Source: Octopus sinensis
Taxonomy: Eukaryota
DNA length: 64,000 nt
Reading direction: 5' to 3'
NCBI RefSeq assembly: GCF_006345805.1
Contig: NC_043000.1
Span: forward strand, 30,256,001 to 30,320,000
Made by a program: the position numbers and the translations under genes. Positions 2,620-56,432 of this stretch are shown in pieces; positions within the stretch are counted from its first letter, which is position 1, and the number at the start of each line of letters is the position of its first letter. The notes beneath the pieces are model-generated. The model was not told where the DNA came from. It did no database searches and saw nothing but the letters and a program-made list of their open reading frames with translations.

Positions 2620-3765
2620 TCACTCCTCTGGAACTTCACCATTCAAACTGACAGAAAGATAGATGCAAATGGGCCAGACATCATATTGAAAGACTTCAGA
2701 CAAAGACCATGCCTCCTCATTGATATGACTGTCCCAATCGATATAAACGTATCTGTCAAGACCTACCAAAAACTGAGCAAATATAAAAATCTTGAAATAG
2801 AAATCAGCAAAATGTGGAACCTGAAGACTAAAACAATACCTGTTGTCATAGATGCCCTGGGAATGATAGCAAAAGGGGCTGATTGCTACCTAACTCAGAT
2901 ACCAGGAAACCCAAAAATGGCAGAAATACAAAAGATAGTGCTCATGGGAACTGCTCATATCCTACGCAAAATACTTTCTATGTATCCCAAGTTTTAAAAC
3001 AAACCTAGTTTTCGTTTTTTTTTTTTTAGACATTCACTGGTACAACACTAAATACAAAACAAAATATATGGCACACTAGGCATAACAACAACATGAACTT
3101 CCAACCTGTTGTCTCTTGAGGTCTGGGTGAGACTTGGAGCCAACTTGTACAAATATAAAGCAAAAGTCAAACATAGAATAATAATAATAATAACAAATGC
3201 CCTGATGCAGTACCAGACAGTGGCTCTCATGGCTTCTGAGCTTAACTGATTGGAAGTGTTATCATGTACATTGTTTTGTCTTGGTATAAAAGATGGGCTA
3301 CAGCAAATATTCTGCTCAATACCACAGATTTGCTTGTCAGTTGTTTGACCTTAACCAGTTGACCATGTCCCTTAGTGGCTGATGATATGTGCATCTCTGA
3401 CCACAAGCAGAAGTAGTGGGGGAGCATCAAATCCATGTGTTGAGAGGGATTCTTTGGGGTTTGAATAATTCACCTCTGGAAACATGGGTGTTTTGCTCAA
3501 CATCCTTAAACATCCCTTATTCAGGGACCTTTTGAGCGGGATGGGTTACTCGACCAGAAGACAATTCTAACTGGGCCCTACCTGCAAGGTCATGCGCTGT
3601 TTATCTTGATATGAGATCACCATGTCGCCCACATATGTTTGTGATGCATGTGCCTAGTGTACCCTTATCAGACGGGTAGTCATGATGGTTATATTGGTCT
3701 TCGTATATTTTACCCCAGAGTCACTTTGATGGCATGCACTGCTCTCTCACTCAATTATAATAATA
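2620..3765 (+). mobile_element. 5'-truncated R4/Dong-like non-LTR retrotransposon: restriction-like endonuclease C-terminus plus 3' UTR
   Basis: ORF 2593-2997 has PDIILKD..CLLIDMTVP..K..KLSKYKNL..W..IPVVIDALG, a PD-(D/E)xK RLE pattern; flanked by (TAA)n. That 3000-3765 is its UTR is inferred. Confidence 0.8.
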
Positions 3766-9179: not shown

Positions 9180-10515
9180 CTTAGGAATTAAGCATGAAAA
9201 TATAATCATGGTTGTTCATGATAGGACAATGTATAGTTGGTGACTGAATCAATCCAAAGCTTTCGATAGGGTAGACCACTGATACTTGGAGGCTGTTCGC
9301 ATAGCGGCTGGTTTCAGTCCCGTCTCCCGCGGCTGGGTAGCTTCTTTGTACAGAGGCATCCGTTCGGTAATTCGCGTGAATGGACATCTATCGAGACCTT
9401 TCGACATTGCACATTCGGTCCGTCAAGGATACCTCTCTCGTCGCTTTTGTACGTATTGACACTCGAGCCACTACCGCAGAAGCTGGCGACGCTGAGGGGC
9501 ATCCCGCAAGAATTGCGATGCGGAACGGGCGTGTCCGCATACGCACACGACGTCACCGCCATAGTGTCTAGCCAGGAGCACATCGAGCTGGTCTGCGTGA
9601 CACGGAAAGACTACGAAGCGAAAATCAACCAGAAAAATCAGTGGGCTTGCGGCTCGGCACTTGGAAGTCAAACCCATGTCGTCTAATAGCACCTCCGTCG
9701 TGAGGCGCTGGACTGACGGTCCGGTTGAGTGGTTTGGGGTCTAGTTTGGTGCGGAGCGACAAACGGAGAAGAACTGGAACGAGAAAACGAGTATGGTGGT
9801 CACTCTCGCCGGCAATGGGCCGAGAGGAAGCTGTCCCTAAATGGTCGGGCGGAGATGGCGAAGACGTACATCGCGTCCGTCATCTACTACAGCCTGAACA
9901 TCGTGCCTGAACACCCTACCATCACCAAAATAGAACGCATTCTGTTCGGCTTCTTGTGGGAAGGATGCATTCTGATGGTCAGGCGATCCATTTGCTGCTA
10001 AAACTCGTTAAAAGGAGGGCTGGGCATGCCGTGGCTGATAATGCCAGACATGCGCTGAGACTGCGACATCTCCGGATCTACGTAGAAAGCCGGTGAACAG
10101 GTGTGGTCGCCGTTTGTGAGGTGAAATTTCCCGCAGCTCGTCTCCATGACTGAATTGCAGTCGTGGATCAAAAAGAGGCCAAGGAAGGGCGAATGACACC
10201 GCGAGTGTCGGTTGCTCTCGAGCAACTATGCTGTCCCGGGTCGACCTTGAGCAACTGCAACAGGACTAATATAAGGAATGGGTGGAGGGGAGGCACGTTG
10301 ACAATCTCGGGGCGAACCTGGGAGCCGACGAGGTATAGCTGACCGCCTGTGCAAGACGTCTTTCGGGTCGGGACCTATGGACAACAATCAAAGATCCCTG
10401 GCCTGCCAGTGCTATCGAGAAGCGCTACCCGTTCGGGATAAGCTCTACAGGCATGACTCGACAAACACGGAGCTGTCCTGCTCGAGATGCGGTCAGAGCG
10501 ACGAAACCGTTTAGC
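9180..10515 (+). mobile_element. Degraded Tx1/L1-clade LINE ORF2 (RT to CCHC zinc knuckle)
   Basis: KAFDRVDH, SVRQG, YAHD (for YADD), GGLGMP and CSRCGQSDETV motifs across frameshifts. Confidence 0.85.
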
Positions 10516-11401
10516 CCGAACTCGTGCAGTATTCAACCATTTCCGATCTGTGGGCCCAACAACCCTGGTTGCCCCAATGCCTCCGCCTGTAACTACTCCT
10601 CAGAATTGACTTCAAAATACCTCGACCGTGTCCTTGCCCCACTAGTGGCTTCACTACCCTCCCACATCCACGACACTAATCATGCTCTCCGTCTTTTCAA
10701 CTCTTGCTTCTTCCCTCCTGGCCGCTCTAAACTTCTCTTTACTCTTGAAATCAAGAGTCTATATACGGTGATCCTACACAAGGAACACCTACTTGCTCTG
10801 AAACACCTCCTAGACATTCGACCCAACCCCCACCTGACACCTCCAAATGTCGTCTGGCCGAAATTGTTCTCTCCGTCACCTGATTCTCTTTCTCGGGGAA
10901 TTTTTAACAGCATGTACTCGGGAGTGGCCATGGGAACGAGAATGGGCCCTAACTATGCGTATCTGTTCGTTGGCTACGTTGAGGCCCAGATATTCTCACG
11001 ATTCACTGGCCCCACTCCTGAACTATATGGCCATTATATTGATGACTGTATCGGTGCGACCTCACTCTCCCGCCAACAACTAGACTCTTTCTTCTCTTTT
11101 ATCCAATCCTTCCATCCATTCCACGAATTCTCCTACTCTATTTCCAACACTTCCGTTGCATTTCTCGACATTTCGGTCAACATACACCTCCCCACTCACA
11201 CTACATCATCCACTACAAACATAACCTCTCCTCCTCCCACCCTACCTCCACCAAGCTCCCTAACCCCTACTCCCAATTCTTTTGTTTATGCAGGTTCGGC
11301 AGTGATGACCGTGATTTTGAGAATCTGTCTTAACAGATACATACATACATATATACATACATACATACATATATACATACATACATACATACACACATAC
11401 A

Positions 11402-11435
<34 letters not shown>

Positions 11436-11930
11436 CATACATACATACATACATACATGCATGCATGCATGCATGCATACATACATACATACATACATAC
11501 ATACATACATACTACATACATACACACACACATACATACATACATACATACATACATACATACATACATACATACACACATACATACATACATACGCATA
11601 CATACATACATACATATAATAGGCAGCTGGTGCACTCAGGATCGCTGATCAGGGATCTTCCCTCACCGCAATCCACTCAGCCCTTGTCAGAGCTCCTTCC
11701 GTGGACCGTGCCCCTGCTTACCCGCCCCACTGTTGCCCTTTCTAGTTTCCACTCACCTACCACCCCTCTACCCTGCACCTCCTACGCACAATTCTCCGAG
11801 CCTTCTACCTCGCACATCTTCCTCAACCTACCCCTTCCCTCCTTCAAACGAGCCTATAACCTGCATGACAAACTGGTCCACAGTTTTCTTCCCAACCCCA
11901 TCTCACAACATGGGTCTTACCCCTGCTCCC
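10515..11930 (+). mobile_element. Penelope-like element RT fragment interrupted by (CATA)n
   Basis: ORF 10453-11619: SKYLDRVLAPLV..HIHDT, IKSLYT, GVAMGTRMGPNYA, YIDDC, AFLDI. Confidence 0.9.
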
Positions 11931-12026
11931 TGTCTATATATAGACGATAGGTAGATAAATTTACTTGGAATACATGCGTGGTGTTCAATCATATGATATA
12001 AATAACACATACCCACACACATAATA

Positions 12027-12997: not shown

Positions 12998-13294
12998 TAC
13001 CCGCTCTACTTGTTAGATCATTTAAATTCTATCATGATTGACATATTGCTTATATTTCATGTAAAAAAACTGGAGACCAATTTAATATCAGCATTCGTTG
13101 TCATGGCCAGCTAGCCATGTTTAACTATGTTCCAAATACTTCTGATATAAAGAAATTGGAAGAGAAAATATAGAGATGATACGTACGCTATTAACAAGTC
13201 AAACATATTCTACTATACTAGTTGTGATCTATATAAAGTATTTATACATATATATATAGGCAGATATGTATATACGTATGTGTATATATACGTA

Positions 13295-13440
13295 ATAGAA
13301 ATATTAAAATAACTAAGTCTCTCCTTTGTGTATCAAATAGCTAACTTAAGGCGATGGCCTCATGGAGCTAATAAGCGGACAGCTTTTTTCTTATTTTTAT
13401 AAGAATGCCATATTAGTATGGCGATAACTATTATTATATA
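13295..13440. repeat. Short fold-back fragment of the 362-bp HHR family at 40.1-41.0 kb
   Basis: tttgtgtatcaaatagctaacttaaggcg..cgataactatt matches 40.5/40.9 kb and is preceded by an inverted tagaaatattaaaataactaagtctctc. Confidence 0.8.
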
Positions 13441-13792
13441 TACGTATATATTTGCAAATATATATTTGTAGTATAATAAATGGATTCAGAAAATCGTGTG
13501 GCTATTACAGAAAGCTCCTCCAACGAACTCGGCTATCAGTTCACATATTAATTCAATACAGAAGGGACGAGTGGTGAATATATTTATTCAACCGCTTGGC
13601 ATCCGTTGGATGAATTTTTCTTTTTAGACTTGTGTTTTGGTGCCTCGTCTTTGTCCAACAAAATGACCATCCCGAAATACAACAATGTATGTATGCATGT
13701 ATGTATGCATGTATGTATGTATGTATATATGTATGTATTATATATATGTGTGTGTATGTGTGTGTATATATATATATATATATGTGAGTGTA

Positions 13793-20074: not shown

Positions 20075-20755
<681 letters not shown>

Positions 20756-27051: not shown

Positions 27052-29325
27052 TGTTAGAGTATGTTTAGTTGTGGTCTGTATTTTTGAATAAGATTACTTT
27101 CCTTATTATTCGTGTTTGGTCTGTGGTGTTGTCCGAGCATTGGTATAGTGGGAAGACTAAGAATTTGGGGGACTTATTGTGTGCACAAAGGTCTAAGTGT
27201 CCACTTAGTGGTATCTGTCTTGTGGAGGGGTCCCTCAGTTGTTGTGTGGTGAACTGTCATTCTGTCTCTGAGGGTAAGGCTCGTTTGCCCTATGTAGTCT
27301 TCGTGGCATCCTTCACACCTTATGACGTAGAGTAAATTTTTTGATGCGCACGTGAAATTATTTTTTATGATGAATGTGTGTCCCGAGTGGAACTTGTACG
27401 ACGATCCCTCAATGAGGTGGATGCAGGTCTTGCAGTTGGGGCGACCACATTTTTTGATGATGGGCGGTGGGTTTGTGTCGTGTAATTTTGCGTTGGTGAG
27501 GAGGTTTTTTAGGGATTTAGGTTGTCTCTTACTTTCTATTATTTTATGAGCTGCCAGTATTTTTTTCAGGCGTGGGTCTTGATTTAGTTGTGGAATGTTG
27601 TTGTATATAATAGTGTAAGCTTCTGCATTCCTTGGGTTGTGTGTTGAGAGATAAGGGAGGCTATTGACTGTACTGTGGATGTGTTTGGGTTTTCGAAGGT
27701 CTTGAATGTTGATTGATTTGGCCCGTTCTATTCCATTGTCTACTAGTGATGCCGGGTAATGTCTTTCGAGAAGAATTGCCCTTAGTTCCCGGAGTCTTCT
27801 ATTTCGTGTTGTGTCATTTGAGACAATAGTGCAGATTCTTCTCGCTAGGTTGAAGGGGATATTTGTCTTTGTGTGTTTTGGGTGATTGGAGGTGAATAGA
27901 AGGTATTGTTTAGAGTCAGTGGGTTTGTAATGGATGTCAGTTTCAATGTTGACGCCTTTTTAATGATTAGTATGTCAAGAAAAGGGAGTTGGTCCTGACT
28001 ATATTCCATTGTGAATTGAATGTTGTATTTACACTGTTGATAAGGTTTTTGAAGTCTATAAGTTGGTCGAGTGTGTGGGACCATAGGATGAGGCAATCAT
28101 CTAAGTAGCGTTTCCAGTTCTCCAACAGGTATTTGTGGAAAGACTGGCCGTACTTATATTTGGATTTTTCATAGATATGTGATTCCAGGTAGGCCATCAC
28201 CAGGTTTGCATAGGTAGGTGCAACTTTCGTACCCATTGCAGTTCCTGAGACCTGTCTGTAAGTGTTGTTGTAGAAATACATGAAGTTGTTTTGCAGAATA
28301 AATTGAGGCCCTCAATTATGAATTCTTTTTTAATTCTTTCCGGGATCTCATTGGGATATTTATCCAGCCAGAATTTAATGGCTTCCAGTCCAAATTCATG
28401 TGGGATTGTGGTGTAAAGATTAATAACATCAAAAGAAACGATTAAGGTGTCTTTATCGGCATGTTTGGGGGAGATGGTTAATAGGTCCAGGTCATCTCTT
28501 ACAATACTTGGAATGTGTTTCAGTATTGGCTTTAAGATGATATCTATAAAGTTGCTAAGTCTGTGTGTTTCACAACTTGGGCCTGCCACTATTGGTCTCA
28601 GTTTGAGATCAGTGGGATGTGGTATAGTGATGCAGGTTGAAGTGGACTTTTTGCAAGCTTCTGTGATAATTTGACTCTTGTGTATTTTTGGAAGCCCATA
28701 GAGTGTGCTGGTTTTGCAATTAAATTTAGTAATGTAGTCACATTCCTTTGCTGTCAAGTCATTCCGGTGTTGGTAAATGAGTGCCTTCAGATTGGTCATT
28801 GTTTTGGATTGCTGGTAGTCGACTACTCTTTCGTAGTATGTGGTATCCTCTAAAAGGAGAGATACAGAGTTTTTATTGCTCAGTATTCATAACAACGACC
28901 GTACTACCCTTATCAGCTTCCTTTATTGTGACGTCATGATTGTCTCGTAGCGTATGGATGATTTCCCATTCTCTTTTACTGGTGTTGGGTTTGAGTTTAG
29001 GTTGTGGGAGTTCACCATAAGGGAAGTTGGAGATGTAATCGCAAAATTTGTCTAAGGTTTTGTTTTTGCCTTTTATGGGATTATAGTTGCTTTTGTTACA
29101 GACCATTGATTCGTCGTTATTATTAGTTTTCCTGTTAAAAAATTCCTCTGTGAGGCGTAATTTTCTGCAAAAGTGCGAGATGTCATCCTGTATTTCCCTC
29201 AGGTTAGGGTATTGCGGAGTTGGGGTGAATTTTAGTCCTCTTGAAAGGATTTTTATTTGTGGTGTCGACAGGTTTAGGTTAGAAAGATTCACTATTTTTG
29301 GTTTTTCGGGGTTGGTATCTACCAT
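27052..29325 (-). pseudogene. PLE polyprotein: RT plus Cys-rich linker plus GIY-YIG endonuclease, frameshifted
   Basis: IVNLSNLNL..LSRGLKFTPTP; LRPIVAG; SFDVINLYTTIPH; GTAMGTKVAPTYANL; RYLDDC; CGRPNCKTC; LYVIRCEGCHEDYIGQT. Confidence 0.92.
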
Positions 29326-29862
29326 CTGGTGTCGTGGAAACTGATGCCCTTGCCTAATAAAGGAATCCTGGGGGTTCTTCTATTTGCGGTATTTTGCTGT
29401 ATGTGATTCTGTCCCCCGTTGACATGTCTGTTGAAGAGGTTTTGGTTGTTGTGATTCTGTCCCCCGTTGCTATGTTGTCTGTTGAGGAGGTTTTGGTTGT
29501 TCCAGGGTTGGGTTGTTGGTGTGGCCTCCTGGAAGAGTTTTGGTTATTCCAGGGTTTGGGTTGTTTGTCCTGGGTGTAATGTTGGTTCCTTAGAGTGGGT
29601 TGGAAACTATTCATGGTTTAGAAGTGAATCCCTATATGTTGGGGGAGAACTCTGAGTTAGGAGCGGTTTGGGTTGGAATCTACAATCATAGTTCAGAGAT
29701 GGGTTTCTAAGTGATGGGTAGGATCTCCGAATCTGGAACGGTTCTTGTGTGGGTTGGGGTCTATGTTGTCTGGTAAAGTTTTGTCGTGTGATGATGGGTG
29801 TCTCGGTTCTTTTGATGGGATTGTAGTGCTGTCTGTAAGTTCTGTTGTTGTTGTTGTCGATG

Positions 29863-30720
29863 TTAGGGGTGGTGGTGTGTGTTCGGTGTTTTGTGGTTGG
29901 TTTTCTTTGTTTTTGGCGAGGGGTGTGTTGAAGTAGATATTTTAAAATATGGGTTGCTTGAAAGGTGTTCCTTTGTGAACTCTGTTTCATAATTAGGGAA
30001 CCAGCTGTTTTTTTCCATTCGCTGGAGGGATGTTATTTCTTCATCCTCGCAGTTTTTTCTCCAGAGTTTGGTGGTTTCATCAAGGAGTGCTCCTTCACAG
30101 TGTTTTGAGATTTCAATCTGCATTTCATTGTCAAGGGTCTTGGATTTTTCTTCACTGGCGTTGGCTCTGAGCCGCAAGGGTTCTACTTCCGTTTTGAATT
30201 TTTCAAAAGCTAGTTTCTCCTGAGTTTTTTTTTGGTTTTCTGGTTCATTTTGGATGGGTTTTATTTGTAGTTTTCTGGGTAGGATGATAGGGGTGGAGTT
30301 GAGCCACTTTTCATAAATGTCAGCTTTGTTGTTATTTTTTATGAAATTCCAGAAGGCAAACTTACGCGCTTTGAGATTTTTACTCCAGGTGTTGTTAAGA
30401 GAGCTTTTAATTGAGAAGCAGTCTTTAGTTTGCTCCTGCTTTGGGAGCACTGCCGTCTCTATGGATTTCATTAGGTTTTGCAGTGTTGGGATGATGTCAG
30501 GGATTTGATTGGTTGTTTTGGCCTCCATGAGTCCATTTAGGTATAAGTGCGATTGTTCGACTTTGTTTATTATGGTTGAAAGTTTCGAGGAGATTTCTTG
30601 TAATTCTTTTAGGATATTTTGGTTCATTAAAGATTCTGCTTGTTGTGATTTGGGTGGCATTTTCGGGACTCGTGTGATGTTTATATATATATAAAAAAGT
30701 TGCGTTGTGGGGTATCGCAC
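29863..30720 (-). CDS. PLE-internal upstream ORF (285 aa), charged and probably helical, function unknown
   Basis: Long complex ORF directly downstream of the 5' pLTR on the same strand as the RT; likely start MPPKSQ. Confidence 0.6.
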   Translation of the reverse strand: MRYPTTQLFYIYINITRVPKMPPKSQQAESLMNQNILKELQEISSKLSTIINKVEQSHLYLNGLMEAKTTNQIPDIIPTLQNLMKSIETAVLPKQEQTKDCFSIKSSLNNTWSKNLKARKFAFWNFIKNNNKADIYEKWLNSTPIILPRKLQIKPIQNEPENQKKTQEKLAFEKFKTEVEPLRLRANASEEKSKTLDNEMQIEISKHCEGALLDETTKLWRKNCEDEEITSLQRMEKNSWFPNYETEFTKEHLSSNPYFKISTSTHPSPKTKKTNHKTPNTHHHP

Positions 30721-37380: not shown

Positions 37381-38099
37381 TAGAGATCCCCTTTGTTAAC
37401 AGATCGCGTCGGTACGTGTATGTTCAGCGACCTAAGTTACGGACGGTCAGGAATGTGATGTCGTCTGCTTTCCGGCAGAGAACAGAAGCACTGCATTCAA
37501 AATCTTCGGATGGTGTTAAAAATATTTTCTGTCTTCTCTCTTTCTCGCACACATGCACACATGCATTTTCGTGTGTATGTGTATGTGCCTGTGTGTGTGT
37601 GTATGTTTGTGTGTGTGTTTATGTGTATGTTTGTGTGTGTATGTGTATGTATATATGTGTGTGTGCGTGTGCGTGTTTGTGAAACAATCCTTACGCGATT
37701 CTTCCTTCTTTGAATAGTTGACCTTGTGATCTTCAAAAGTGTCTTAATATTATATCCGTTGCGACAAATCTATTTTTAAGATCGAACACCAGTTTGCTTG
37801 GGGTTACTCTCTCCTTAAATGTGCAAGTGACATATACGACAAAAAGAGAGAAAAAAATCTTGATTGCAGAATATTCCAAAGACCTTCTATACAGTTCTAT
37901 GAAATAACATTTGTGGATAAATTGTCTACATACAAATATGTTTTGGAAGATAGTCTGTATAGATATATTCTTTGGAAACTTATGAATAAAGACTTAGAGG
38001 CAGAAACTAGTTTTGGATATCGAGAATACGACAATTCAGTTGGCATTAAAGGGAAATATTCAGTAAAATTTTGTTTCGTGTAATAGGGAGTTTTCAAAA

Positions 38100-38715
38100 C
38101 GTCCGGCTGTTTTCATATTAACTGAAGGCCAAGAGTCCGAATGTGACTTTCAGGTATCCCCCACTAGAAAAAAATCCAGGTTAGTCAAGCCTGGGGAACG
38201 TGAAGGCCATTTAAATTTGACTTCACACGTGTTTCCAGCGAGATGGGGCAACTGCTCATGCTGCAAGAGAAACAATGCAGTTTCTAGGGCAGTGCTATGG
38301 AGAGAAAATAATCTCCCGCTACGGCAACGTCAACTGGTCTTCACGTTGCTCAGATTAGACCAACCCGGATATTTTCTTACGGGAAAACCTGAATGAGAGC
38401 TTTTACGCTAATAAACCGGAGATCCTGGTTCAACTGAAGGAGAACATCAACAGAGAAGTCAGAGAAGTGAGGTCTGAAACTCTTGAGGTTGTTATGGTGC
38501 AAGTTTTTGAAAACCAAAAAACGTGTGAAGACAAAAATGGCTGCCATTTAAGCGATGTCTAATTTCAAATATAATGTAGTGGTGTTGCAAAATGTGACTT
38601 CTGCATATTAATTACCATTATGTCCTTCATATTATATCAACGGTTCATGCATGTATTTGTACTGTTAAGGAAGCTAACAAAAACTGAAACCCACAGTGAC
38701 TTTTGGGATACCCTG
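38100..38715 (+). mobile_element. Tc1/mariner-superfamily (DD37D-like) 3' half with terminal repeat
   Basis: FQRDGATAHAARETM..NKPEILVQLKENI; ends ttttgggataccctg followed by TA. Confidence 0.7.
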
Positions 38716-38910
38716 TATATATATATATATATAGAAGACAAAAAAGAGTGAAAAACTACAGAAGGCTTGCGATATTTGGTTAAAGAATATATTTAAATCG
38801 TTTTGTTAGAAAAATGTTATAAAATTTGCGTTATAGTAACATAGTTTTGGGAGAAATGAAAATATGGAACGCTTCATTAATTTGCGTGTCATCCTTGCGC
38901 CGGGGGCATT

Positions 38911-39017
38911 GTACTAGCTACGGCGGTACATATTCTAAAACTGGAACGATACAGAGAAGATTAGCATGGCCCATACGCGAGGATGACACGCAAATTCGTG
39001 AAGCGTTCCATATTTTT
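38911..39017 (+). ncRNA. U6: U6 snRNA copy, probable pseudogene
   Basis: gtactagctacggcggtacata..ACAGAGAAGATTAGCATGGCCC..GGATGACACGCAAATTCGTGAAGCGTTCCATATTTTT; the upstream promoter is replaced by an inverted partial copy. Confidence 0.9.
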
Positions 39018-39241
39018 ATTTCTCCAACAACTATGTTACTATACGCAAATTATAATATTTTTCTAACATAAGGATTTAAATATATTCTTTAACCATATAA
39101 CACAAGACTTCTGTAGTTTTTTCACTCTTTTTTCTCTTTCATACATCCAACGAGGTGCTTTCACATACCAACTCTCTTACCTAATAAGCAGACAGCTTTT
39201 TTCTTATTTTTATAAGAATGCCATATTAGTATGGCGATAAC

Positions 39242-39321
<80 letters not shown>

Positions 39322-40046
39322 CAGAGTTAGCACATGAATGTGAAACAAGGTGGGAAAAAACGTAACTGGAATACTGGAGCTGCAAAACCACCCCAAACTT
39401 CTACTCAGAATCTCACGTTCATGTTCGTTAGGCAGTTGTGATCAGGAATGGAATAAAAAAAATGTGATTGTACGTATAATGTATATTTGGTTATGATTCA
39501 AATTGGCATTTTCACATTTGAATTTGATTGGTTGATTCCACTAATGATGTTTCAGAAGCATGCAAGTTGAAACAGTAAATATACAAATAGAAAAGGAATA
39601 TAAAATAAAAATGAAAAAGATGTTACATAAATGTCGCGTTGTATAAAATCGAAGAAAGCCTTGAGTCGGATAAAAAGCTTGAGTCAGAAAGAATTCATGA
39701 AGATTAAAATAATTAATGGGAAATAAACATATAATTATTTAAAATATAATAATAACATAATACATACATACACACACATATAAATAATTGTATATATATA
39801 TTGAAATTAATCAAAAGATATACTAAGTGTGTCTACCTGCTGGAAATAACAGCTAAAAGTCAGATTTAATTTGCCAAAATAGCATGTTCTTTGATTAATT
39901 TTAATCCTTCAGCTATTTAATGCTTCTTTGGGCCCTGCAATCGCCTATATTATTGCTTCTGTTATTATCATTTTTAAATTGCCACATTAGATACTAACAG
40001 AGTCAAGGATATCTTCAGAAATAATTTTTTGTGAATGAATTGCTCC

Positions 40047-40110
<64 letters not shown>

Positions 40111-40335
40111 GAAATATTAAAATTACTAAGTCTCTCTAAAAGAGAACACGGCAGCGTTCCCGGAAAATAATAGTTATCGCCATACTAATATGGCATTCTT
40201 ATAAAAATAAGAATAAAGCTGACCGCTTATTAGCTCCATGAGGCCATCGCCTTAAGTTAGCTATCTGATACACAAACTGTATCCATATAACCTTCGAACA
40301 AGGGAGGTCAGTCGCTCCACACTACTTGACCGACA

Positions 40336-40377
40336 GCTACAGACGCGTTTCGGGGTATTGCCCCTTTTCAATGTAGC
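40336..40377 (-). ncRNA. Minimal type I hammerhead ribozyme, U3-A8 core variant
   Basis: Exact reverse complement of 40773-40814. Confidence 0.75.
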
Positions 40378-40772
40378 GTAGTCAGACCAGTAGGTGTCGC
40401 TTCTGACAATCTCTGTTCGAAGGTTTTATTTACCCCGAAACGCGTATGTAGCTGTCGGTCAAGTAGTGTGGAGCGACTGACCTCCCTTGTTCGAAGGTTA
40501 TATGGATACAGTTTGTGTATCAAATAGCTAACTTAAGGCGATTGCCTCATGGAGCTAATAAGCGGTCAGCTTTATTCTTATTTTTATAAGAATGCCATAT
40601 TAGTATGGCGATAACTATTATTTTCCGGGAACGCTGCCGTGTTCTCTTTTAGAGAGACTTAGTAATTTTAATATTTCTATTATTGAAAACAAGTGGATGT
40701 ATTCCACCGAAACTAGGTAAATAAAACCTTCGAACAGAGATTGTCAGAAGCGACACCTACTGGTCTGACTAC

Positions 40773-40814
40773 GCTACATTGAAAAGGGGCAATACCCCGA
40801 AACGCGTCTGTAGC
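40773..40814 (+). ncRNA. Minimal type I hammerhead ribozyme, U3-A8 core variant
   Basis: gctaca-TTGAAAA-gggg-caata-cccc-GAAA-cgcg-TC-tgtagc; predicted GUC cleavage after 40808. Confidence 0.75.
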
Positions 40815-41009
40815 TGTCGGTCAAGTAGTGTGGGGCGACTGACCTCCCTTGTTCGAAGGTTATATGGATACAGTTTGTGTATCAAATAGCTAACTTAAGG
40901 CGATGGCCTCATGGAGCTAATAAGCGGTCAGCTTTATTCTTATTTTTATAAGAATGCCATATTAGTATGGCGATAACTATTATATATATATATATATATA
41001 TATACACGA

Positions 41010-41156
41010 TGTTTTGTTTCAGTATACGTCTACCAAACCAATTCGCCATGCATTAGTCGGCCCGAGGCTATAGTAGAAAACACTTGACCAAGGTGCTACT
41101 TTGTGCGACTGAATTCAGAACCATATTGTTGAGAAGCAAGCTTCTCACACAGCCAT
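41010..41156 (-). mobile_element. SINE family A 5' fragment
   Basis: gtcggcccgaggctatagtagaaaacacttgaccaaggtg. Confidence 0.75.
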
Positions 41157-41214
41157 TTAGATTATATAAGTTTGATTGTGTTTCGAACGTTGAAGAAGAA
41201 AATTGTGGTTAATA

Positions 41215-41420
41215 TTGGTTTCAAATTTTGACATAAAGCCTGCAAAATCTAGTATTGGTTTAATCTATTACATCGACCCTATTGCTTAACTAGTACTAAT
41301 TTTATAGACCCGAAAGAAGGAAATGCAAAGTGGACCTCGTCGGAATTTGATCACAGAACGTAAAGAGCCGGACGAAATGCTACAAACCGTTTTGCCTATC
41401 ATGCTAAAGAATCTGCTAGT
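41215..41420 (-). mobile_element. SINE family C fragment
   Basis: aaatgcaaagtggacctcgtcggaatttgatcacagaacgtaaagag. Confidence 0.6.
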
Positions 41421-42310
41421 TAGCCGCCTTAATCTTGGCTTATATTGAGCATTGCTGTTTCTGGGTTTAATATACACTGCATCGGCAGTAGTTGTTGTCA
41501 AGGTGAGGCAAATCATCTCAGAACAGCACTAGGGTATCGATTTCAGATAACCTTTTAGAATTGCAATCTAATTCATCAATTTTTACCATTTTCCCTGATC
41601 GCAACCTTGTCTAGGAAAGATTATTTCTTTAATAAACAAAAATACCCATTCAAAATGGACGTTTTTGTAATAATGTCAGTTACTGTGTTATCGTCGCTAT
41701 AGTGACGATACCATTATCAATGATAATGGTATCAAAACCCTTAGCGACACCAATGAGAATCACAATGTTATTTATAATTACTTTCAAAAATCTTTACGAA
41801 TGTTGTCCACGTGATTTAACTGAAACAATAGGAAACAAAGGTGTGCTACACTAACCCAGGTAGGAAAGGTTATCTGCAGTTTTGCCTTGGCTCTTTATAA
41901 AAATATGACGTTAACCAGTAACTATTGTACTCAGCGGTGTTGGTTTTTACATTGCGGATAATTTTATGCGATATGCATCTCACCTTAGTTCAATCTTACA
42001 CAATGTGATCGATATATCTGACTTGAAGAAACTATATTAAAGAATGATCTAAAATCGATTGTATTTTTAGGTCATTTGCTATTTCACTGGAAAAGGTAAT
42101 AAAATGATTGTCAAGCGTGAAATTGCTATTATTGTCATACTTTCATTTCTTCATATTTTTTTGGCATTATATTATAATGTCTGTGGCAAGTTCTTTACGA
42201 TTTTAATACAGAAAACGATATATTAGGAAGAGTTGCATTTGACAAACATCCTCAGGCATGTACTTCAGCATATCTGCTGCATAGTAAATATACTACTTCA
42301 ACTGAAGGTA

Positions 42311-42378
<68 letters not shown>

Positions 42379-42379
42379 T

Positions 42380-42505
42380 ATTTTTAAATCTCTCTAAAGA
42401 AGCCTACGGCAGCAGTACTGGATATTAATAGTTATCACCAAGCTAACATGGCGATTCGTGATCCTAGTTTTCTGCACTGCCATGTTAGCTTGGCGATAAC
42501 TATTA

Positions 42506-42510
<5 letters not shown>
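42380..42510. repeat. Fold-back fragment of a diverged relative of the 362-bp family
   Basis: aatagttatcaccaagctaacatggc pairs with gccatgttagcttggcgataactatt. Confidence 0.7.
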
Positions 42511-42598
<88 letters not shown>

Positions 42599-54719: not shown

Positions 54720-54876
54720 TGTGTGGCTGTATGGTAAGTAGCTTGCTAACCAACCACATGGTTCCGGGTTCAGTCCCACTGCGTGGCATCTTGGGCGAGT
54801 GTCTTCTGCTATAGCCCCAGGTCGACCAATGCCTTGTGAGTGGATTTGGTAGACGGAAACTGAAAGAAGCCTGTCA

Positions 54877-54941
<65 letters not shown>

Positions 54942-56432
54942 GAGGGGCGTTCAATAAGTAATGCCCCTGACCCACTTCCCATAGCAGTAGTGCAACGAAA
55001 CTTGGCACAGTTATTAGTCTTTTTCTACATAGGAACCACCCAGAGTTACGCATTTCTCCCATTGTTTGATGCAGCTCTGGAGACCGTTTTTGGTCCTCCA
55101 ACCCGAATGTGACTTCAGAAATCAAGGCTGCATCATCTGGGAAACGCTTTCCTTTCAAAAACAACTTCATGACTGGGAAGAGGTGAAAATCAGAGGGTGC
55201 AAGGTCAGAAAAGTAGGGGGATGGGGGAGGAGTTCATAGCCATACACCTGTGCTTCTGATCTGGCGACAAGCGAGTTGTGGACCGGAGCGTTGTCCTGCA
55301 GGAGGAGGATGTCTTTGCTGATCTTGCCCCGCCTCTTGATTTTGATAACTTCTCTTAATTTCCTCAAAAGTGAAGCATAATAGGTTCCTGTAATTGTGGT
55401 ACACTTTGCCAGGAAATCTGTCATCACTACTCCGTCCTGGTCCCAGAAGACTGTGAGCATGACCTTGCCAGCGGAGGGCTGCACCCTTGCCTTCCTTGGA
55501 GGGGGTGAGTCACGGTGCTTCCACTGCATTGACTGGGCTTTGGTCTCTGGATCATCGTGATGGACCCAGGTTTCATCCTGTGTAATCAGTCTTTTGAAAA
55601 ATTTTGACTCATCTTCTTGGCACATCTCCAAATTCACCCTCGAGCACTCGACGCGTTCTTGCTTCTGGAAAGGCGTGAGCAACCTGGGAATCCATCTGGC
55701 AGACACCTTTTTCATATGCAAATGGTCATGAATGATAGTTTCCACAGACCCGGTACTAATCTTGACCTCATGGGCTATTTGGCGAATAATTATGCGTCGA
55801 TCTTCCAAAATGGCAGCCTCAACTTGATGGACAGATGCCTCATCAATGGCAGAAGGGGGCGACCAGATCTGGGAGCTGTTTCCACAGAGTTCCGACCATG
55901 TTTGAATTCACGATGCCAGAGTTTTACAAGGTCATATGATGGTGCATCATCACCATAAGTTACTTTCATTTCATCAAAAGTCTCCTGTGGTGTGCGTCCT
56001 TTCAAATACAAAAACCGGATCACTGCTCGACACTCAACAGGCTCCATTTCACACTTGACTCGGTTGAAACACCTGTAAATCAGAAACCACAATTAATTCA
56101 GAGCTGTAATTTGCCACTTACTCTATAGAGATATAAATGATTGCACATGCAAAATTTCAGCTAGATCCAACAATGCAAGTGGGTCAGAGGCATTACTTAT
56201 TGAACGTCCCTCGTATGTGTGTGTGTTTGTGTTTGTCCCCCTAGCATTGCTTGACAACCGATGCTGGTGTGTTTACGTCCCCGTCACTTAGCGGTTCGGC
56301 AAAAGAGACCGATAGAATAAGTACTGGGCTTACAAAGAATAAGTCCCGGGGTCGATTTGCTCGACTAAAGGCGGTGCTCCAGCATGGCCGCAGTCAAATG
56401 ACTGAAACAAGTAAAAGAGTAAAAGAGTAAGA
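54720..56432 (+). mobile_element. SINE family A copy split by a mariner insertion
   Basis: 5' half at about 54720-54938 and 3' half at 56216-56432. Confidence 0.9.
54941..56213 (-). mobile_element. Full-length mariner transposon (1273 bp), transposase frameshifted
   Basis: TA target duplications; TIRs cgaggggcgttcaataagtaatgcccctgacccac; MEPVECRAVIRFLYLKG..PRSGRP, WIPR, QDETW, LLQDNAPVH, LLPHPP. Confidence 0.95.

What the first reader, a model, noticed from the sequence alone, without database searches (positions are those of the whole stretch)
38735..39135. U6 snRNA plus 3' flank duplicated as a 400-bp fold-back
Seen: a full U6 (38911-39017) plus about 120 bp downstream is preceded by an inverted copy of the U6 3' half (38859-38908) and the same downstream sequence. 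The arms carry different substitutions, which argues against a simple assembly artefact. The U6 5' stem shows compensatory changes and a UACG loop. Established: L1-made U6 pseudogenes normally have poly(A), TSDs or chimeric tails, not fold-backs. Inference: a read-through U6 transcript was reverse-transcribed by PLE-type machinery, or this is a U6-headed SINE family.
Basis: partly seen in the sequence, partly recalled or inferred. Interest (0 to 1): 0.7.

Follow-up and report, generated by a model that had tools for sequence, protein, structure and literature searches.

The report
Dead U6 retrocopy with inverted twin
In an octopus genome, a dead copy of the U6 splicing RNA sits head-to-head with a shortened mirror copy of itself inside a TA repeat, most likely a by-product of reverse transcription by a mobile element and not a working gene.

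Summary
A full-length U6 lies at 38911-39017 (Rfam, 99.7 bits). An inverted copy of U6 nt 56-107 plus the same 126-bp downstream sequence lies at 38734-38909. The arms are about 90% identical and one extra base separates the inverted arm from U6 +1.

The U6 is a pseudogene. Every arm-to-arm difference in the U6 part is a departure of one arm from the metazoan consensus, including three changes in the catalytic internal stem-loop of the full copy.

The whole block 38734-39244 lies between (TA)9 and (TA)38. It ends with the 64-bp 3' terminus of a 362-bp repeat family. Elsewhere in the window that family occurs three times as head-to-head twins in TA repeats, with fixed outer ends and variable inner ends.

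Best reading: a chimeric U6 retrocopy whose inverted twin formed during target-primed reverse transcription. This layout is described for Penelope-like elements.

Pol III read-through is unlikely, because four T-runs lie in the path. A U6-headed SINE family could not be tested, because no other copy was found in anything searchable. A DNA-level snap-back at the TA tract remains a serious rival.

It is a new variant of known kinds and of moderate interest.

The parts
38716..38733 (.). (TA)9 microsatellite directly abutting the outer end of the inverted arm. It is the left half of the presumed TA-repeat target.
   Evidence: Sequence; direct-repeat family D1.
38734..38857 (-). Inverted copy of the 126-bp non-U6 sequence 'X' (X 1-126).
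   Evidence: Alignment A1. 112/124 identities plus 5 gap columns. blastn E 2.5e-39.
38858..38909 (-). Inverted, 5'-truncated U6 (nt 56-107). It differs from the metazoan consensus at 5 positions.
   Evidence: Rfam partial hit of 37 bits covering the 3' half of the model. 44/52 identities to the right copy.
38910..38910 (.). Single extra T between the inverted arm and U6 +1. It matches neither arm (a G would be expected if the arm continued).
   Evidence: Sequence; end of the arm alignment.
38911..39017 (+). Full-length U6 snRNA sequence, judged a pseudogene. ACAGAGA and AGC are intact, but C63A, G65A and A69G lie in the internal stem-loop, A25U and U31C lie upstream, and there is no independent promoter.
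   Evidence: Rfam RF00026, 99.7 bits, model 1-105, with alignment to the consensus; fold.
39018..39143 (+). X 1-126: non-U6 sequence fused to the U6 oligo-T end. This is the part duplicated in the inverted arm. It contains three T5-T6 runs.
   Evidence: No other copy in the window.
39144..39180 (+). X 127-163: a 37-bp stretch present only on the right side. It is unique in the window.
   Evidence: blastn of 39144-39244 against the window: only positions 38-101 are repeated.
39181..39244 (+). 64-bp 3' terminus (unit positions 299-362) of a 362-bp repeat family, ending ...GGCGATAACTAT directly at the TA repeat.
   Evidence: 95.3% identity to unit 299-362. Other copies at 13368-13431, 40170-40233, 40555-40618 and 40917-40980.
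39245..39320 (.). (TA)38 microsatellite, the right half of the presumed target.
   Evidence: TRF: 38 copies, 100% matches.

Best explanation
The block 38734-39244 is a composite retro-insertion into a (TA)n microsatellite of an Octopus genome (sinensis/vulgaris group).

Proposed sequence of events. A reverse transcriptase primed on the TA-repeat DNA end and copied the last 64 nt of a 362-nt repeat-family RNA. It then copied 163 nt of an unrelated RNA (X), then a complete U6 snRNA up to its 5' end. U6 was joined to X at its oligo-U 3' end, either by template switching or by prior RNA ligation. The result is U6-X-tail next to (TA)38. The other DNA end of the same break also acquired a cDNA of the same U6-X sequence. 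This happened either by priming of the opposite TA end at an AUA site (X 124-126) or by the first cDNA snapping back on itself. That second cDNA stopped at U6 nt 56 and met the first one head-to-head with one extra base.

Shown: the anatomy, the exact junctions, the TA flanks, the shared 64-bp end, the decay of U6 in both arms, and the recurrence of the same twin layout in the neighbouring family.

Inferred: that the events were RNA-templated and simultaneous, and that the enzyme is of the Penelope-like (RT plus GIY-YIG) kind. An R4/Dong-type LINE is the alternative enzyme.

The product is inert DNA. The U6 has no promoter of its own and has drifted neutrally.
For: (1) The inverted arm ends 1 nt from U6 +1, the natural end of a cDNA of U6 RNA.

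(2) The U6 ends in T5 and is fused directly to unrelated sequence, with the same junction in both arms. This is the form known for U6/LINE chimeras (PMC4476161; PMC4494074). RNA ligation of U6 to other RNAs is also documented (PMC6789731, abstract).

(3) The block lies between (TA)9 and (TA)38 and ends with unit positions 299-362 of a repeat family whose other copies also end at TA repeats.

(4) That family occurs three more times as head-to-head twins with fixed outer ends and variable inner ends:
- 40105-40434(-) unit 98->362->65 | 40431-40980(+) unit 175->362->362
- 13293-13323(-) unit 34-64 | 13325-13431(+) unit 256-362
- 42366-42457(-) unit 334->362->62 | 42478-42503(+) unit 337-362
In the 40-kb case the minus copy contains unit 98-174 followed by the 362->1 junction. 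That order is not contiguous in the plus copy, so it is not a simple DNA fold-back of its partner. It fits two cDNAs made on a multimeric template.

(5) In all four cases the TA repeat is at the outer ends, not at the centre of symmetry. This is the opposite of what a break-and-fold-back at a TA tract predicts.

(6) PLE insertions are described as 5'-truncated, partially tandem, 'often' with an inverted 5'-truncated copy adjacent at the 5' end. They have a one-sided 30-40-bp extension, a bias for (TA)n in some clades, and occasional retrotransposition of host genes in trans (PMC8557442).

(7) PLEs are present and abundant. An RT plus CxxC plus GIY-YIG-like reading frame lies at 27.1-30.7 kb. 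A homologue locus has GIY-YIG next to the RT. PLEs make up 6.8% of the O. vulgaris genome.

(8) Both arms decayed from a consensus U6: 3 changes in the right arm and 5 in the left account for all 8 differences. Neither copy is under selection.
Against: - No second copy of X or of the U6-X junction was found anywhere, so neither the RNA template nor a family could be demonstrated.
- The 64-bp tail and X show no similarity to the two PLE copies in the window.
- No hammerhead ribozyme is detected by Rfam in the block or in the 362-bp family.
- The link to PLE enzymes therefore rests on architecture alone. (TA)n-targeting R4/Dong LINEs, abundant in Octopus, are an alternative.
- The inverted arm lacks the 37 + 64 bp found at the right end, so the two arms did not start at the same template position.
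- No target-site duplication can be read in a TA repeat.
- The 362-bp family was not seen in 141 kb of O. sinensis DNA. It may be a local cluster and not a dispersed mobile family.
- A replication fork stalling at the TA tract that abutted the U6 5' end would place a DNA-level snap-back junction at the same spot.
Confidence: 0.55

Rival explanations
1. Post-insertion DNA-level inverted duplication. An ordinary U6-X retrocopy sat with its 5' end against a (TA)n tract. A replication fork stalled, or a break occurred, at the edge of the hairpin-prone TA tract. The free 3' end snapped back on its own strand, copied about 179 nt (U6 56-107 plus X 1-126), and rejoined the TA tract through ATA/TA microhomology.
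For: The geometry is identical to the cDNA snap-back version. The TA tract begins exactly where the retrocopy's 5' end would have been, so the junction at U6 +1 is not a pure coincidence. The extra T (38910) could be the last base of the TA tract. The outer junction shows ATA/TA overlap. The region 38.7-42.6 kb is dense in long TA tracts and palindromes.
Against: Templated snap-back insertions in end joining are usually tens of bases, not about 180 (established knowledge; not tested here). The neighbouring twins have TA repeats at their outer ends and fixed outer end-points with variable inner ones. One of them cannot be derived from its partner by a single fold-back. These points indicate an integration-coupled process acting at this kind of site.
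Confidence: 0.22
2. The locus is one member of a multi-copy, U6-headed non-autonomous retroelement: a SINE-like 'head-body-tail' of U6 + X + 64-bp tail. It would be mobilised by the partner that recognises the tail, and the inverted twin would be that partner's usual insertion scar.
For: The head / unrelated body / tail-shared-with-another-family / terminal microsatellite layout is the classical SINE layout. snRNA-headed SINEs exist for U1 and U2 (PMC4494074). An automated annotation of O. vulgaris lists one SINE/U family (369 kb) and one SINE/U-L1 family (53 kb) (PMC13282606). Identical U6-X junctions in both arms suggest a pre-existing contiguous RNA.
Against: No second copy of X or of the junction was found in any of these searches:
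- the 64-kb window
- 203 kb of fetched mollusc loci, including 141 kb of O. sinensis
- a metagenome 21-mer scan, which gave only chance hits
- a viral scan
- word-indexed protein searches
- the 150 best of 1092 U6-spanning ORFs in 1.84 billion representatives
These samples would miss anything below tens of thousands of copies. Animal U6 has no internal promoter, and the unit contains four to six T4+ runs, so it is a poor Pol III transcript.
Confidence: 0.2
3. One reading: a genuine U6 gene was transcribed past its terminator, and the read-through RNA (U6 plus genomic downstream flank) was reverse-transcribed.
For: The U6-flank junction is the same in both arms. The flank is AT-rich, like ordinary intergenic octopus DNA.
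Against: Pol III would have to ignore T5, T5, T6 and T6 in succession. The right end carries the 3' terminus of a repeat family, which a genomic flank would not be expected to supply at exactly the TA junction.
Confidence: 0.07
4. It is functional: either a working U6 gene whose upstream inverted arm supplies promoter-like elements, or a hairpin-RNA gene whose roughly 180-bp stem feeds small-RNA or RNA-editing pathways.
For: ACAGAGA and AGC are intact and the 5' stem-loop folds. The two substitutions in the left arm create CATTAATTTG at -36 to -27, where a TATA box would lie. The hairpin is very stable.
Against: Three substitutions lie in the internal stem-loop, and C63A breaks a stem pair. 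The U6 part of the arms is no better conserved than the flank (84.6% against 90.3%). The arms carry mismatches and indels with no compensation. There are no expression data.
Confidence: 0.03
5. Assembly artefact, such as a chimeric or palindromic read.
For: Palindromes next to long TA tracts are hard to assemble (noted for PLE structures in PMC8557442).
Against: The arms differ by 20 substitutions and 5 indel columns, and each departs from the U6 consensus at different sites. Artefactual palindromes are near-perfect.
Confidence: 0.02

Closest known systems
U6/LINE-1 chimeric retrocopies (Buzdin 2002; Garcia-Perez 2007; Doucet 2015 'Group IV'; RtcB-ligated U6/L1 RNA, Moldovan 2019)
   Same: A full-length U6 starts at +1 and is fused at its oligo-U 3' end to an unrelated sequence that ends with the 3' terminus of a repeated element. 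The copy is dead and drifting.
   Different: There is no poly(A), no readable TSD and no L1. The target and 3' tail are a (TA)n repeat. There is an intervening 163-bp unknown piece, so it is tripartite. Part of the chimera is present a second time in inverted orientation. The host is a mollusc.
Complex insertions of Penelope-like elements (Evgen'ev and Arkhipova 2005; Craig et al. 2021)
   Same: An inverted 5'-truncated copy lies immediately adjacent to the 5' end of the complete copy. The insertion is in (TA)n. There is extra sequence at one end only. PLEs are known to retrotranspose host sequences in trans.
   Different: The sequence is not a PLE and shares no detectable 3' end with the PLE copies in the window. 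There is no hammerhead ribozyme and no pseudo-LTR. The enzyme assignment is by analogy only.
SINEU, SINEs with snRNA-derived heads (Kojima 2015)
   Same: An snRNA head is joined to an unrelated body and to a tail shared with another repeat. Origin by template switch has been proposed.
   Different: SINEU heads are U1 or U2, the tails are CR1-like, and the families are multi-copy. Here the head is U6 and only one locus is known.
[quoted passage not shown]
   Same: Both DNA ends of the target are used as primers, giving head-to-head cDNAs joined in the middle with few or no extra bases.
   Different: Twin priming inverts the 5' part of one RNA without copying the same segment twice. Here U6 56-107 plus X 1-126 is present in both orientations.
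Fold-back (snap-back) inverted duplications at stalled forks or breaks near AT-rich hairpin-forming repeats
   Same: An inverted duplication with a short spacer, 1-3-nt junction features and an adjacent long TA tract.
   Different: The TA tracts lie at the outer ends and not at the symmetry centre. The same layout recurs with fixed outer ends in an unrelated repeat family.

Membership tests
Functional U6 snRNA gene (Rfam RF00026) | Sequence and structure match at or above the Rfam gathering score over the full model | tested here: met
   99.7 bits against 44, model 1-105.
Functional U6 snRNA gene (Rfam RF00026) | Intact catalytic elements: ACAGAGA, the AGC triad and the internal stem-loop | tested here: not met
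   ACAGAGA and AGC are intact. C63A (breaks C63-G71), G65A and A69G lie in the stem-loop, and A25U and U31C lie upstream (alignment to consensus; numbering from established human U6).
Functional U6 snRNA gene (Rfam RF00026) | External type-3 Pol III promoter (PSE plus TATA at about -30) upstream | tested here: inconclusive
   The 177 bp upstream are the gene's own inverted 3' half and flank. Only an AT-rich CATTAATTTG lies at -36 to -27. The octopus PSE is unknown.
Functional U6 snRNA gene (Rfam RF00026) | Purifying selection relative to flanking DNA | tested here: not met
   The U6 part of the arms is 84.6% identical against 90.3% for the flank. All 8 differences are departures of one arm from the consensus.
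U6/retroelement chimeric retrocopy | Full-length U6 from +1, fused at the oligo-U end to unrelated RNA-derived sequence | tested here: met
   U6 1-107 ends in T5 and is followed directly by X. The junction is the same in both arms.
U6/retroelement chimeric retrocopy | The 3' end is the 3' terminus of a retroelement, with that element's tail | tested here: inconclusive
   The last 64 bp equal unit 299-362 of a repeat family that ends at (TA)n. That the family is a retroelement is inferred from its twin and tandem layout, not shown.
U6/retroelement chimeric retrocopy | Target-site duplication | tested here: inconclusive
   (TA)9 and (TA)38 flank the block. No TSD can be read inside a dinucleotide repeat.
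PLE-type complex insertion | Inverted 5'-truncated copy immediately adjacent to the 5' end | tested here: met
   38734-38909(-) abuts U6 +1 with 1 nt between them. Definition from PMC8557442.
PLE-type complex insertion | Microsatellite, often (TA)n, insertion site | tested here: met
   The same holds for the three twins of the 362-bp family.
PLE-type complex insertion | 3' end shared with an autonomous RT plus GIY-YIG element | tested here: not met
   X and the 64-bp tail show no similarity to the PLE copies at 10.4-12 kb and 27.1-30.7 kb or to anything else in the window. A genome-wide test was not possible.
PLE-type complex insertion | Hammerhead ribozyme in the repeat (canonical EN+ PLEs and retrozymes) | tested here: not met
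   No hammerhead hit at gathering score or at E<=10. By eye only, there is a decayed look-alike in the 362-bp unit.
snRNA-headed SINE (SINEU-like) | Head derived from an snRNA | tested here: met
snRNA-headed SINE (SINEU-like) | Many dispersed copies sharing head, body and tail | not testable with these tools
   No second copy in the window, in 203 kb of mollusc loci, or in the metagenome, viral or protein-library searches. The host assembly itself cannot be searched by DNA here.
L1-type twin priming | 5' segment inverted without duplication of the same segment | tested here: not met
   U6 56-107 plus X 1-126 occurs in both orientations.

The most novel reading that the evidence does not exclude
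Octopus genomes contain a true U6-headed non-autonomous retroelement, which would be the first SINE-like family built on U6. Its RNA would be made by ligation of the 2',3'-cyclic-phosphate end of U6 to the 5'-OH end of a ribozyme-processed or otherwise cleaved repeat RNA. A (TA)n-targeting Penelope-like or R4-type enzyme would mobilise it. Each insertion would leave a long perfect-to-imperfect hairpin that could feed RNA-editing or small-RNA pathways.
Probability: 0.12. Interest if true: 0.65.

Novelty: new variant of a known kind. Interest (0 to 1): 0.4.

Why it matters
How Penelope-like elements integrate is still unknown. Their tandem and inverted scars are usually studied on the elements themselves, where ends are hard to define. 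A host RNA with a known 5' and 3' end (U6) caught inside such a scar works as a ruler. It shows that one cDNA ran to the exact 5' end of its template and that the opposing copy was joined with a single extra base.

If more such loci exist, they would give precise junction statistics for a poorly understood class of reverse transcription. They would also extend U6 chimeric retrocopies, so far a mammalian L1 phenomenon (with fungal parallels), to molluscs and to a different machinery.

If it is a one-off or a DNA-level event, it is an ordinary pseudogene in a rearrangement-prone TA-rich region.

Tried and rejected
- **Other copies of the flank in the window.** A 24-mer with 3 mismatches and blastn at word size 7 found only the two arms.
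- **Metagenome scan.** The scan used the U6-3'-end/flank junction 21-mer. All 19 loci match only the 21-30 nt and have no U6.
- **Viral scan.** A scan with a conserved flank 22-mer found nothing.
- **Protein-word searches.** The 81-aa ORF across the fold-back found only mammalian U6 pseudogene ORFs. A frame-joined translation of flank plus tail found nothing.
- **Exhaustive phmmer of the 81-aa ORF.** It found 1092 U6-spanning ORFs. Among the best 150, none shares the flank or the inverted-arm coding part. The cluster look-up gave no organism names.
- **Exact look-up of a window ORF.** Not on record.
- **Eight mollusc loci (203 kb).** No U6, X, tail or 362-bp unit.
- **Relation of X to the 362-bp unit, or of the left flank to the tail.** Local alignments are no better than shuffles.
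- **Hammerhead ribozymes.** None detected.
- **A MITE or DNA transposon with long terminal inverted repeats.** This would still need the inverted duplication to arise first. The ends show no similarity to the mariner copies, and the putative mariner end at 38694-38716 has no partner in the window.
- **Bacterial promoter/terminator and tRNA scans.** Irrelevant or empty.

Full report
**1. The observation**

Rfam finds a single family in the 64-kb window. It is a full-length U6 at 38911-39017 on the plus strand, scoring 99.7 bits against a gathering score of 44 and covering model positions 1-105. A permissive scan of 38000-42000 adds a second, partial U6 on the minus strand at 38858-38910 (37 bits, E 8e-7). 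It matches only the 3' half of the model.

The repeat finder reports two long inverted-repeat pairs, 38832-38909/38966-39043 and 38751-38822/39050-39121. Together, with small indels between them, they form one fold-back. I aligned 38966-39143 against the reverse complement of 38731-38909. The results were:

| Segment | Identities | Other |
|---|---|---|
| U6 part | 44/52 | |
| Downstream part | 112/124 | 5 gap columns |
| Both | | 8 transitions, 12 transversions |

The spacer between the arms is U6 nt 1-55 plus one extra T (38910). The 413 nt fold as one DNA hairpin of -144.7 kcal/mol, with z = -24.5 against shuffles.

**2. The host**

The window is AT-rich, at about 35% G+C. It is full of microsatellites and transposon fragments.

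A reverse-transcriptase ORF at 28197-28799 finds its best relatives in Mytilus and in several Octopus species. At the DNA level, the comparison with fetched loci was:

| Species | Result |
|---|---|
| O. sinensis (five loci) | Share interspersed repeats with the window at 92-98% identity |
| O. bimaculoides (one locus) | 83% |
| Argonauta (one locus) | Only an old element, at 64% |

The window therefore comes from the O. sinensis/vulgaris group.

**3. The U6 is a pseudogene**

In nt 56-107 the two arms differ at 8 positions. At each position one arm keeps the metazoan consensus. The right, full copy has C63A, G65A and A69G. The left copy has G59C, U64G, C87A, G88A and U107C (alignments). The common ancestor was thus a consensus U6, and both copies have drifted since.

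The three changes in the full copy lie in the internal stem-loop. By the established human and yeast structure, C63A breaks the C63-G71 pair. The U6 part of the arms (84.6%) is no better conserved than the flank (90.3%). The 177 bp upstream of +1 are the copy's own inverted 3' half and flank, so there is no independent promoter.

The 5' stem-loop does fold with an A3-U17 pair and a UACG loop. However, among 146 U6-spanning ORFs recovered from a 1.84-billion-protein library, the commonest N-terminal form encodes A at position 3. That form is CTCFGS, seen 51 times. Forms with G15 are also frequent: CTRFGG 15 times and CTSFGG once. CTSFGG is one base away from this copy. The 'compensatory change' is therefore an ordinary lineage variant of U6 and not evidence of selection on this locus.

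**4. What lies around it**

The left arm starts directly after (TA)9 at 38716-38733. To the right, the shared 126 bp (39018-39143) continue into 37 bp that are unique in the window. Next come 64 bp (39181-39244) that are the 3' terminus of a repeat family, and then (TA)38.

The family has a 362-bp unit, which I defined as 40619-40980. Mapping all its pieces onto that unit gives three further loci:

| Minus-strand copy | Unit positions | Plus-strand copy | Unit positions | Note |
|---|---|---|---|---|
| 40105-40434 | 98->362->65 | 40431-40980 | 175->362->362 | 99.4-99.5% identical to the unit |
| 13293-13323 | 34-64 | 13325-13431 | 256-362 | |
| 42366-42457 | 334->362->62 | 42478-42503 | 337-362 | Diverged |

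All three share the same features:
- They lie between TA-rich tracts.
- The two copies sit head-to-head.
- The outer ends are fixed: unit 62-65 on the minus copy and unit 362 on the plus copy.
- The inner ends vary.

In the 40-kb case the minus copy contains unit 98-174 and then crosses the 362->1 junction. That order does not exist contiguously in its partner. It therefore cannot be a single fold-back copy of the partner. Both look like independent copies of a multimeric template that started at defined 3' sites and were 5'-truncated at different points.

The U6 block has the same layout: (TA)9 | minus: U6 56-107 + X 1-126 | T | plus: U6 1-107 + X 1-163 + unit 299-362 | (TA)38.

**5. Mechanism**

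The layout consists of variable 5' ends meeting in the middle, defined 3' ends facing outward into a microsatellite, partial tandems, and extra sequence at one end only. This is what Craig et al. describe for Penelope-like elements. In their words, insertions are 5'-truncated and partially tandem. [quoted passage not shown] A 30-40-bp extension occurs at one end, and (TA)n is a preferred target in Naiads. They also note that PLEs sometimes retrotranspose host genes in trans (PMC8557442).

PLEs are present in the window and abundant in the host:
- 27.1-30.7 kb (minus strand) carries RT motifs.
- The same reading frame carries a CGRPNCKTC linker and an LLYVIRC...YIGQT GIY-YIG-like core.
- Pfam support for these is weak: RVT_1 at E 2.6e-4 and GIY-YIG at E 0.063.
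- A homologue locus has GIY-YIG next to the RT.
- PLEs make up 6.8% of the O. vulgaris genome (PMC13282606).

I therefore read the U6 block as a by-product of that kind of integration. One cDNA started at the TA repeat on the 64-nt tail and continued through X. It then ran through a complete U6 to its 5' end. A second, opposing cDNA of the same U6-X sequence stopped at U6 nt 56, and the two were joined with one extra base.

The second copy may have come from priming by the other TA end at the AUA of X 124-126. Alternatively the first cDNA snapped back on itself. One locus cannot tell these apart.

**6. How U6 came to be joined to X**

A Pol III read-through transcript would have to pass T5 (39013-17), T5 (39058-62), T6 (39117-22) and T6 (39128-33), which is unlikely.

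The known routes are two. One is template switching from a retroelement RNA to the 3' end of U6, which gives full-length U6 fused to a 5'-truncated partner (PMC4476161; PMC4494074). Tripartite chimeras from double jumps are also described in a fungus (PMC2104539). The other route is ligation of U6 to another RNA before reverse transcription (PMC6789731). The identical junction in both arms fits either a single cDNA that was then copied or a pre-formed chimeric RNA.

**7. What could not be settled**

I found no second copy of X or of the U6-X junction anywhere I could search:
- the window
- 203 kb of fetched mollusc loci
- a metagenome junction scan, which gave only chance 21-mers
- a viral scan
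- two word-indexed protein searches
- the best 150 of 1092 U6-spanning ORFs

These samples cannot exclude a family of hundreds or thousands of copies. An automated O. vulgaris annotation does list one SINE/U family (369 kb) and one SINE/U-L1 family (53 kb).

The tail and X are unrelated to the PLE copies in the window. No hammerhead ribozyme is detected. R4/Dong LINEs are abundant in Octopus and, from general knowledge, target simple repeats. They are an alternative enzyme. The 362-bp family was absent from 141 kb of O. sinensis DNA, so it may be a local cluster.

**8. The main rival**

The main rival is a DNA-level snap-back after insertion. If a plain U6-X retrocopy abutted the TA tract, a fork stalling at that hairpin-prone tract would leave a free 3' end exactly at U6 +1. 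That end could fold back, copy about 180 nt and rejoin the TA tract by microhomology.

Three points argue against this. The copied length is large. The TA tracts lie at the outer ends in all four twins and not at the centres. The neighbouring family shows fixed outer and variable inner ends. I give this rival about 0.2.

**9. Verdict**

| Aspect | Verdict |
|---|---|
| Observation | Confirmed |
RNA-mediated, PLE-like architecture: yes. Read-through: unlikely. SINE family: untested. |
| Novelty | A new variant of known kinds: a U6 chimeric retrocopy combined with a PLE-style inverted twin, in a mollusc |
| Function | None |
| Interest | Moderate, mainly as a natural 'ruler' for an obscure integration mechanism |

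Noticed in passing
window 40105-40980: A young head-to-head twin plus partial tandem of a 362-bp unit. The minus copy (40105-40434) is unit 98->362->65 and the plus copy (40431-40980) is unit 175->362->362. The arms are 99% identical, 4 nt are shared at the junction, and (TA)30 and (TA)12 lie at the outer ends. It is much younger than the U6 fold-back, whose arms are about 90% identical.
   Followed up: yes
window 42313-42560 and 13239-13451: Two more twins of the same family in TA-rich tracts. They have the same outer end-points (unit 62-65 on the minus copy, 362 on the plus copy) but different inner breakpoints. The 42.4-kb copy is only 76-89% identical to the unit.
   Followed up: yes
window 40760-40810 (unit positions about 148-198), also in the other copies: By eye, GCUACA-UUGAAAA-GGGGCAAUACCCC-GAAAC-GCG-UC-UGUAGC has the helix I / helix II / GAAAC / palindromic-loop layout of the minimal hammerheads of Penelope-like elements. 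The CUGANGA box reads UUGAAAA. Rfam finds no hammerhead even at E<=10.
   Followed up: partly
window 27177-30720 (minus strand): A Penelope-like element in several frame-shifted ORFs. It has an N-terminal 285-aa ORF, RT motifs (YRQVSGTAMGT..., RYLDDCLILW), a CGRPNCKTC linker and a GIY-YIG-like core (LLYVIRCEGCHEDYIGQT). A long (TG)n-type microsatellite follows it. Pfam support is weak: RVT_1 at E 2.6e-4 and GIY-YIG at E 0.063.
   Followed up: partly
window 9200-12000 (plus strand): A LINE-type RT fragment (about 9.2-10.4 kb) is followed by a second PLE-like RT fragment (10453-11950; GVAMGTRMGPNYAYLFVGYVE, YIDDCIG, FKRAYNLHDKLVHS). The PLE-like fragment is interrupted by an (ATAC)-like microsatellite that is read through as YIHT repeats.
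   Followed up: no
window 55167-55808 (minus) and 38217-38562 (plus): A mariner-type transposase ORF (Pfam Transposase_1, E 8e-24). A separate transposase C-terminal remnant ends about 150 bp upstream of the (TA)9. The sequence ACAGGGTATCCCAAAAGTCACTG (38694-38716, minus strand) looks like a mariner terminal repeat ending at the TA tract, but it has no partner in the window.
   Followed up: partly
window 41686-41754 (minus): A hairpin scoring 28.5 bits against mir-451 (gathering score 66.5), built around a 27-nt perfect palindrome at 41707-41733. It is probably a chance hairpin or part of another fold-back repeat.
   Followed up: no
protein P0131 (217 aa), P0133 (623 aa) and P0156 cluster (4 members on one 124-kb ENA contig): Some public contigs carry two to four U6 copies in one reading frame or on one contig, which suggests tandem U6 gene arrays in unidentified organisms. 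P0156 encodes the 5' stem GUACUAGCUUCGGCGGUAC, one base away from the copy studied here.
   Followed up: partly
window 56212-56420, 54723-54900, 20101-20700, 3177-3735: Interspersed repeats shared with O. sinensis loci at 94-98% identity (206-596 bp). They were used only to place the window taxonomically and were not classified.
   Followed up: no
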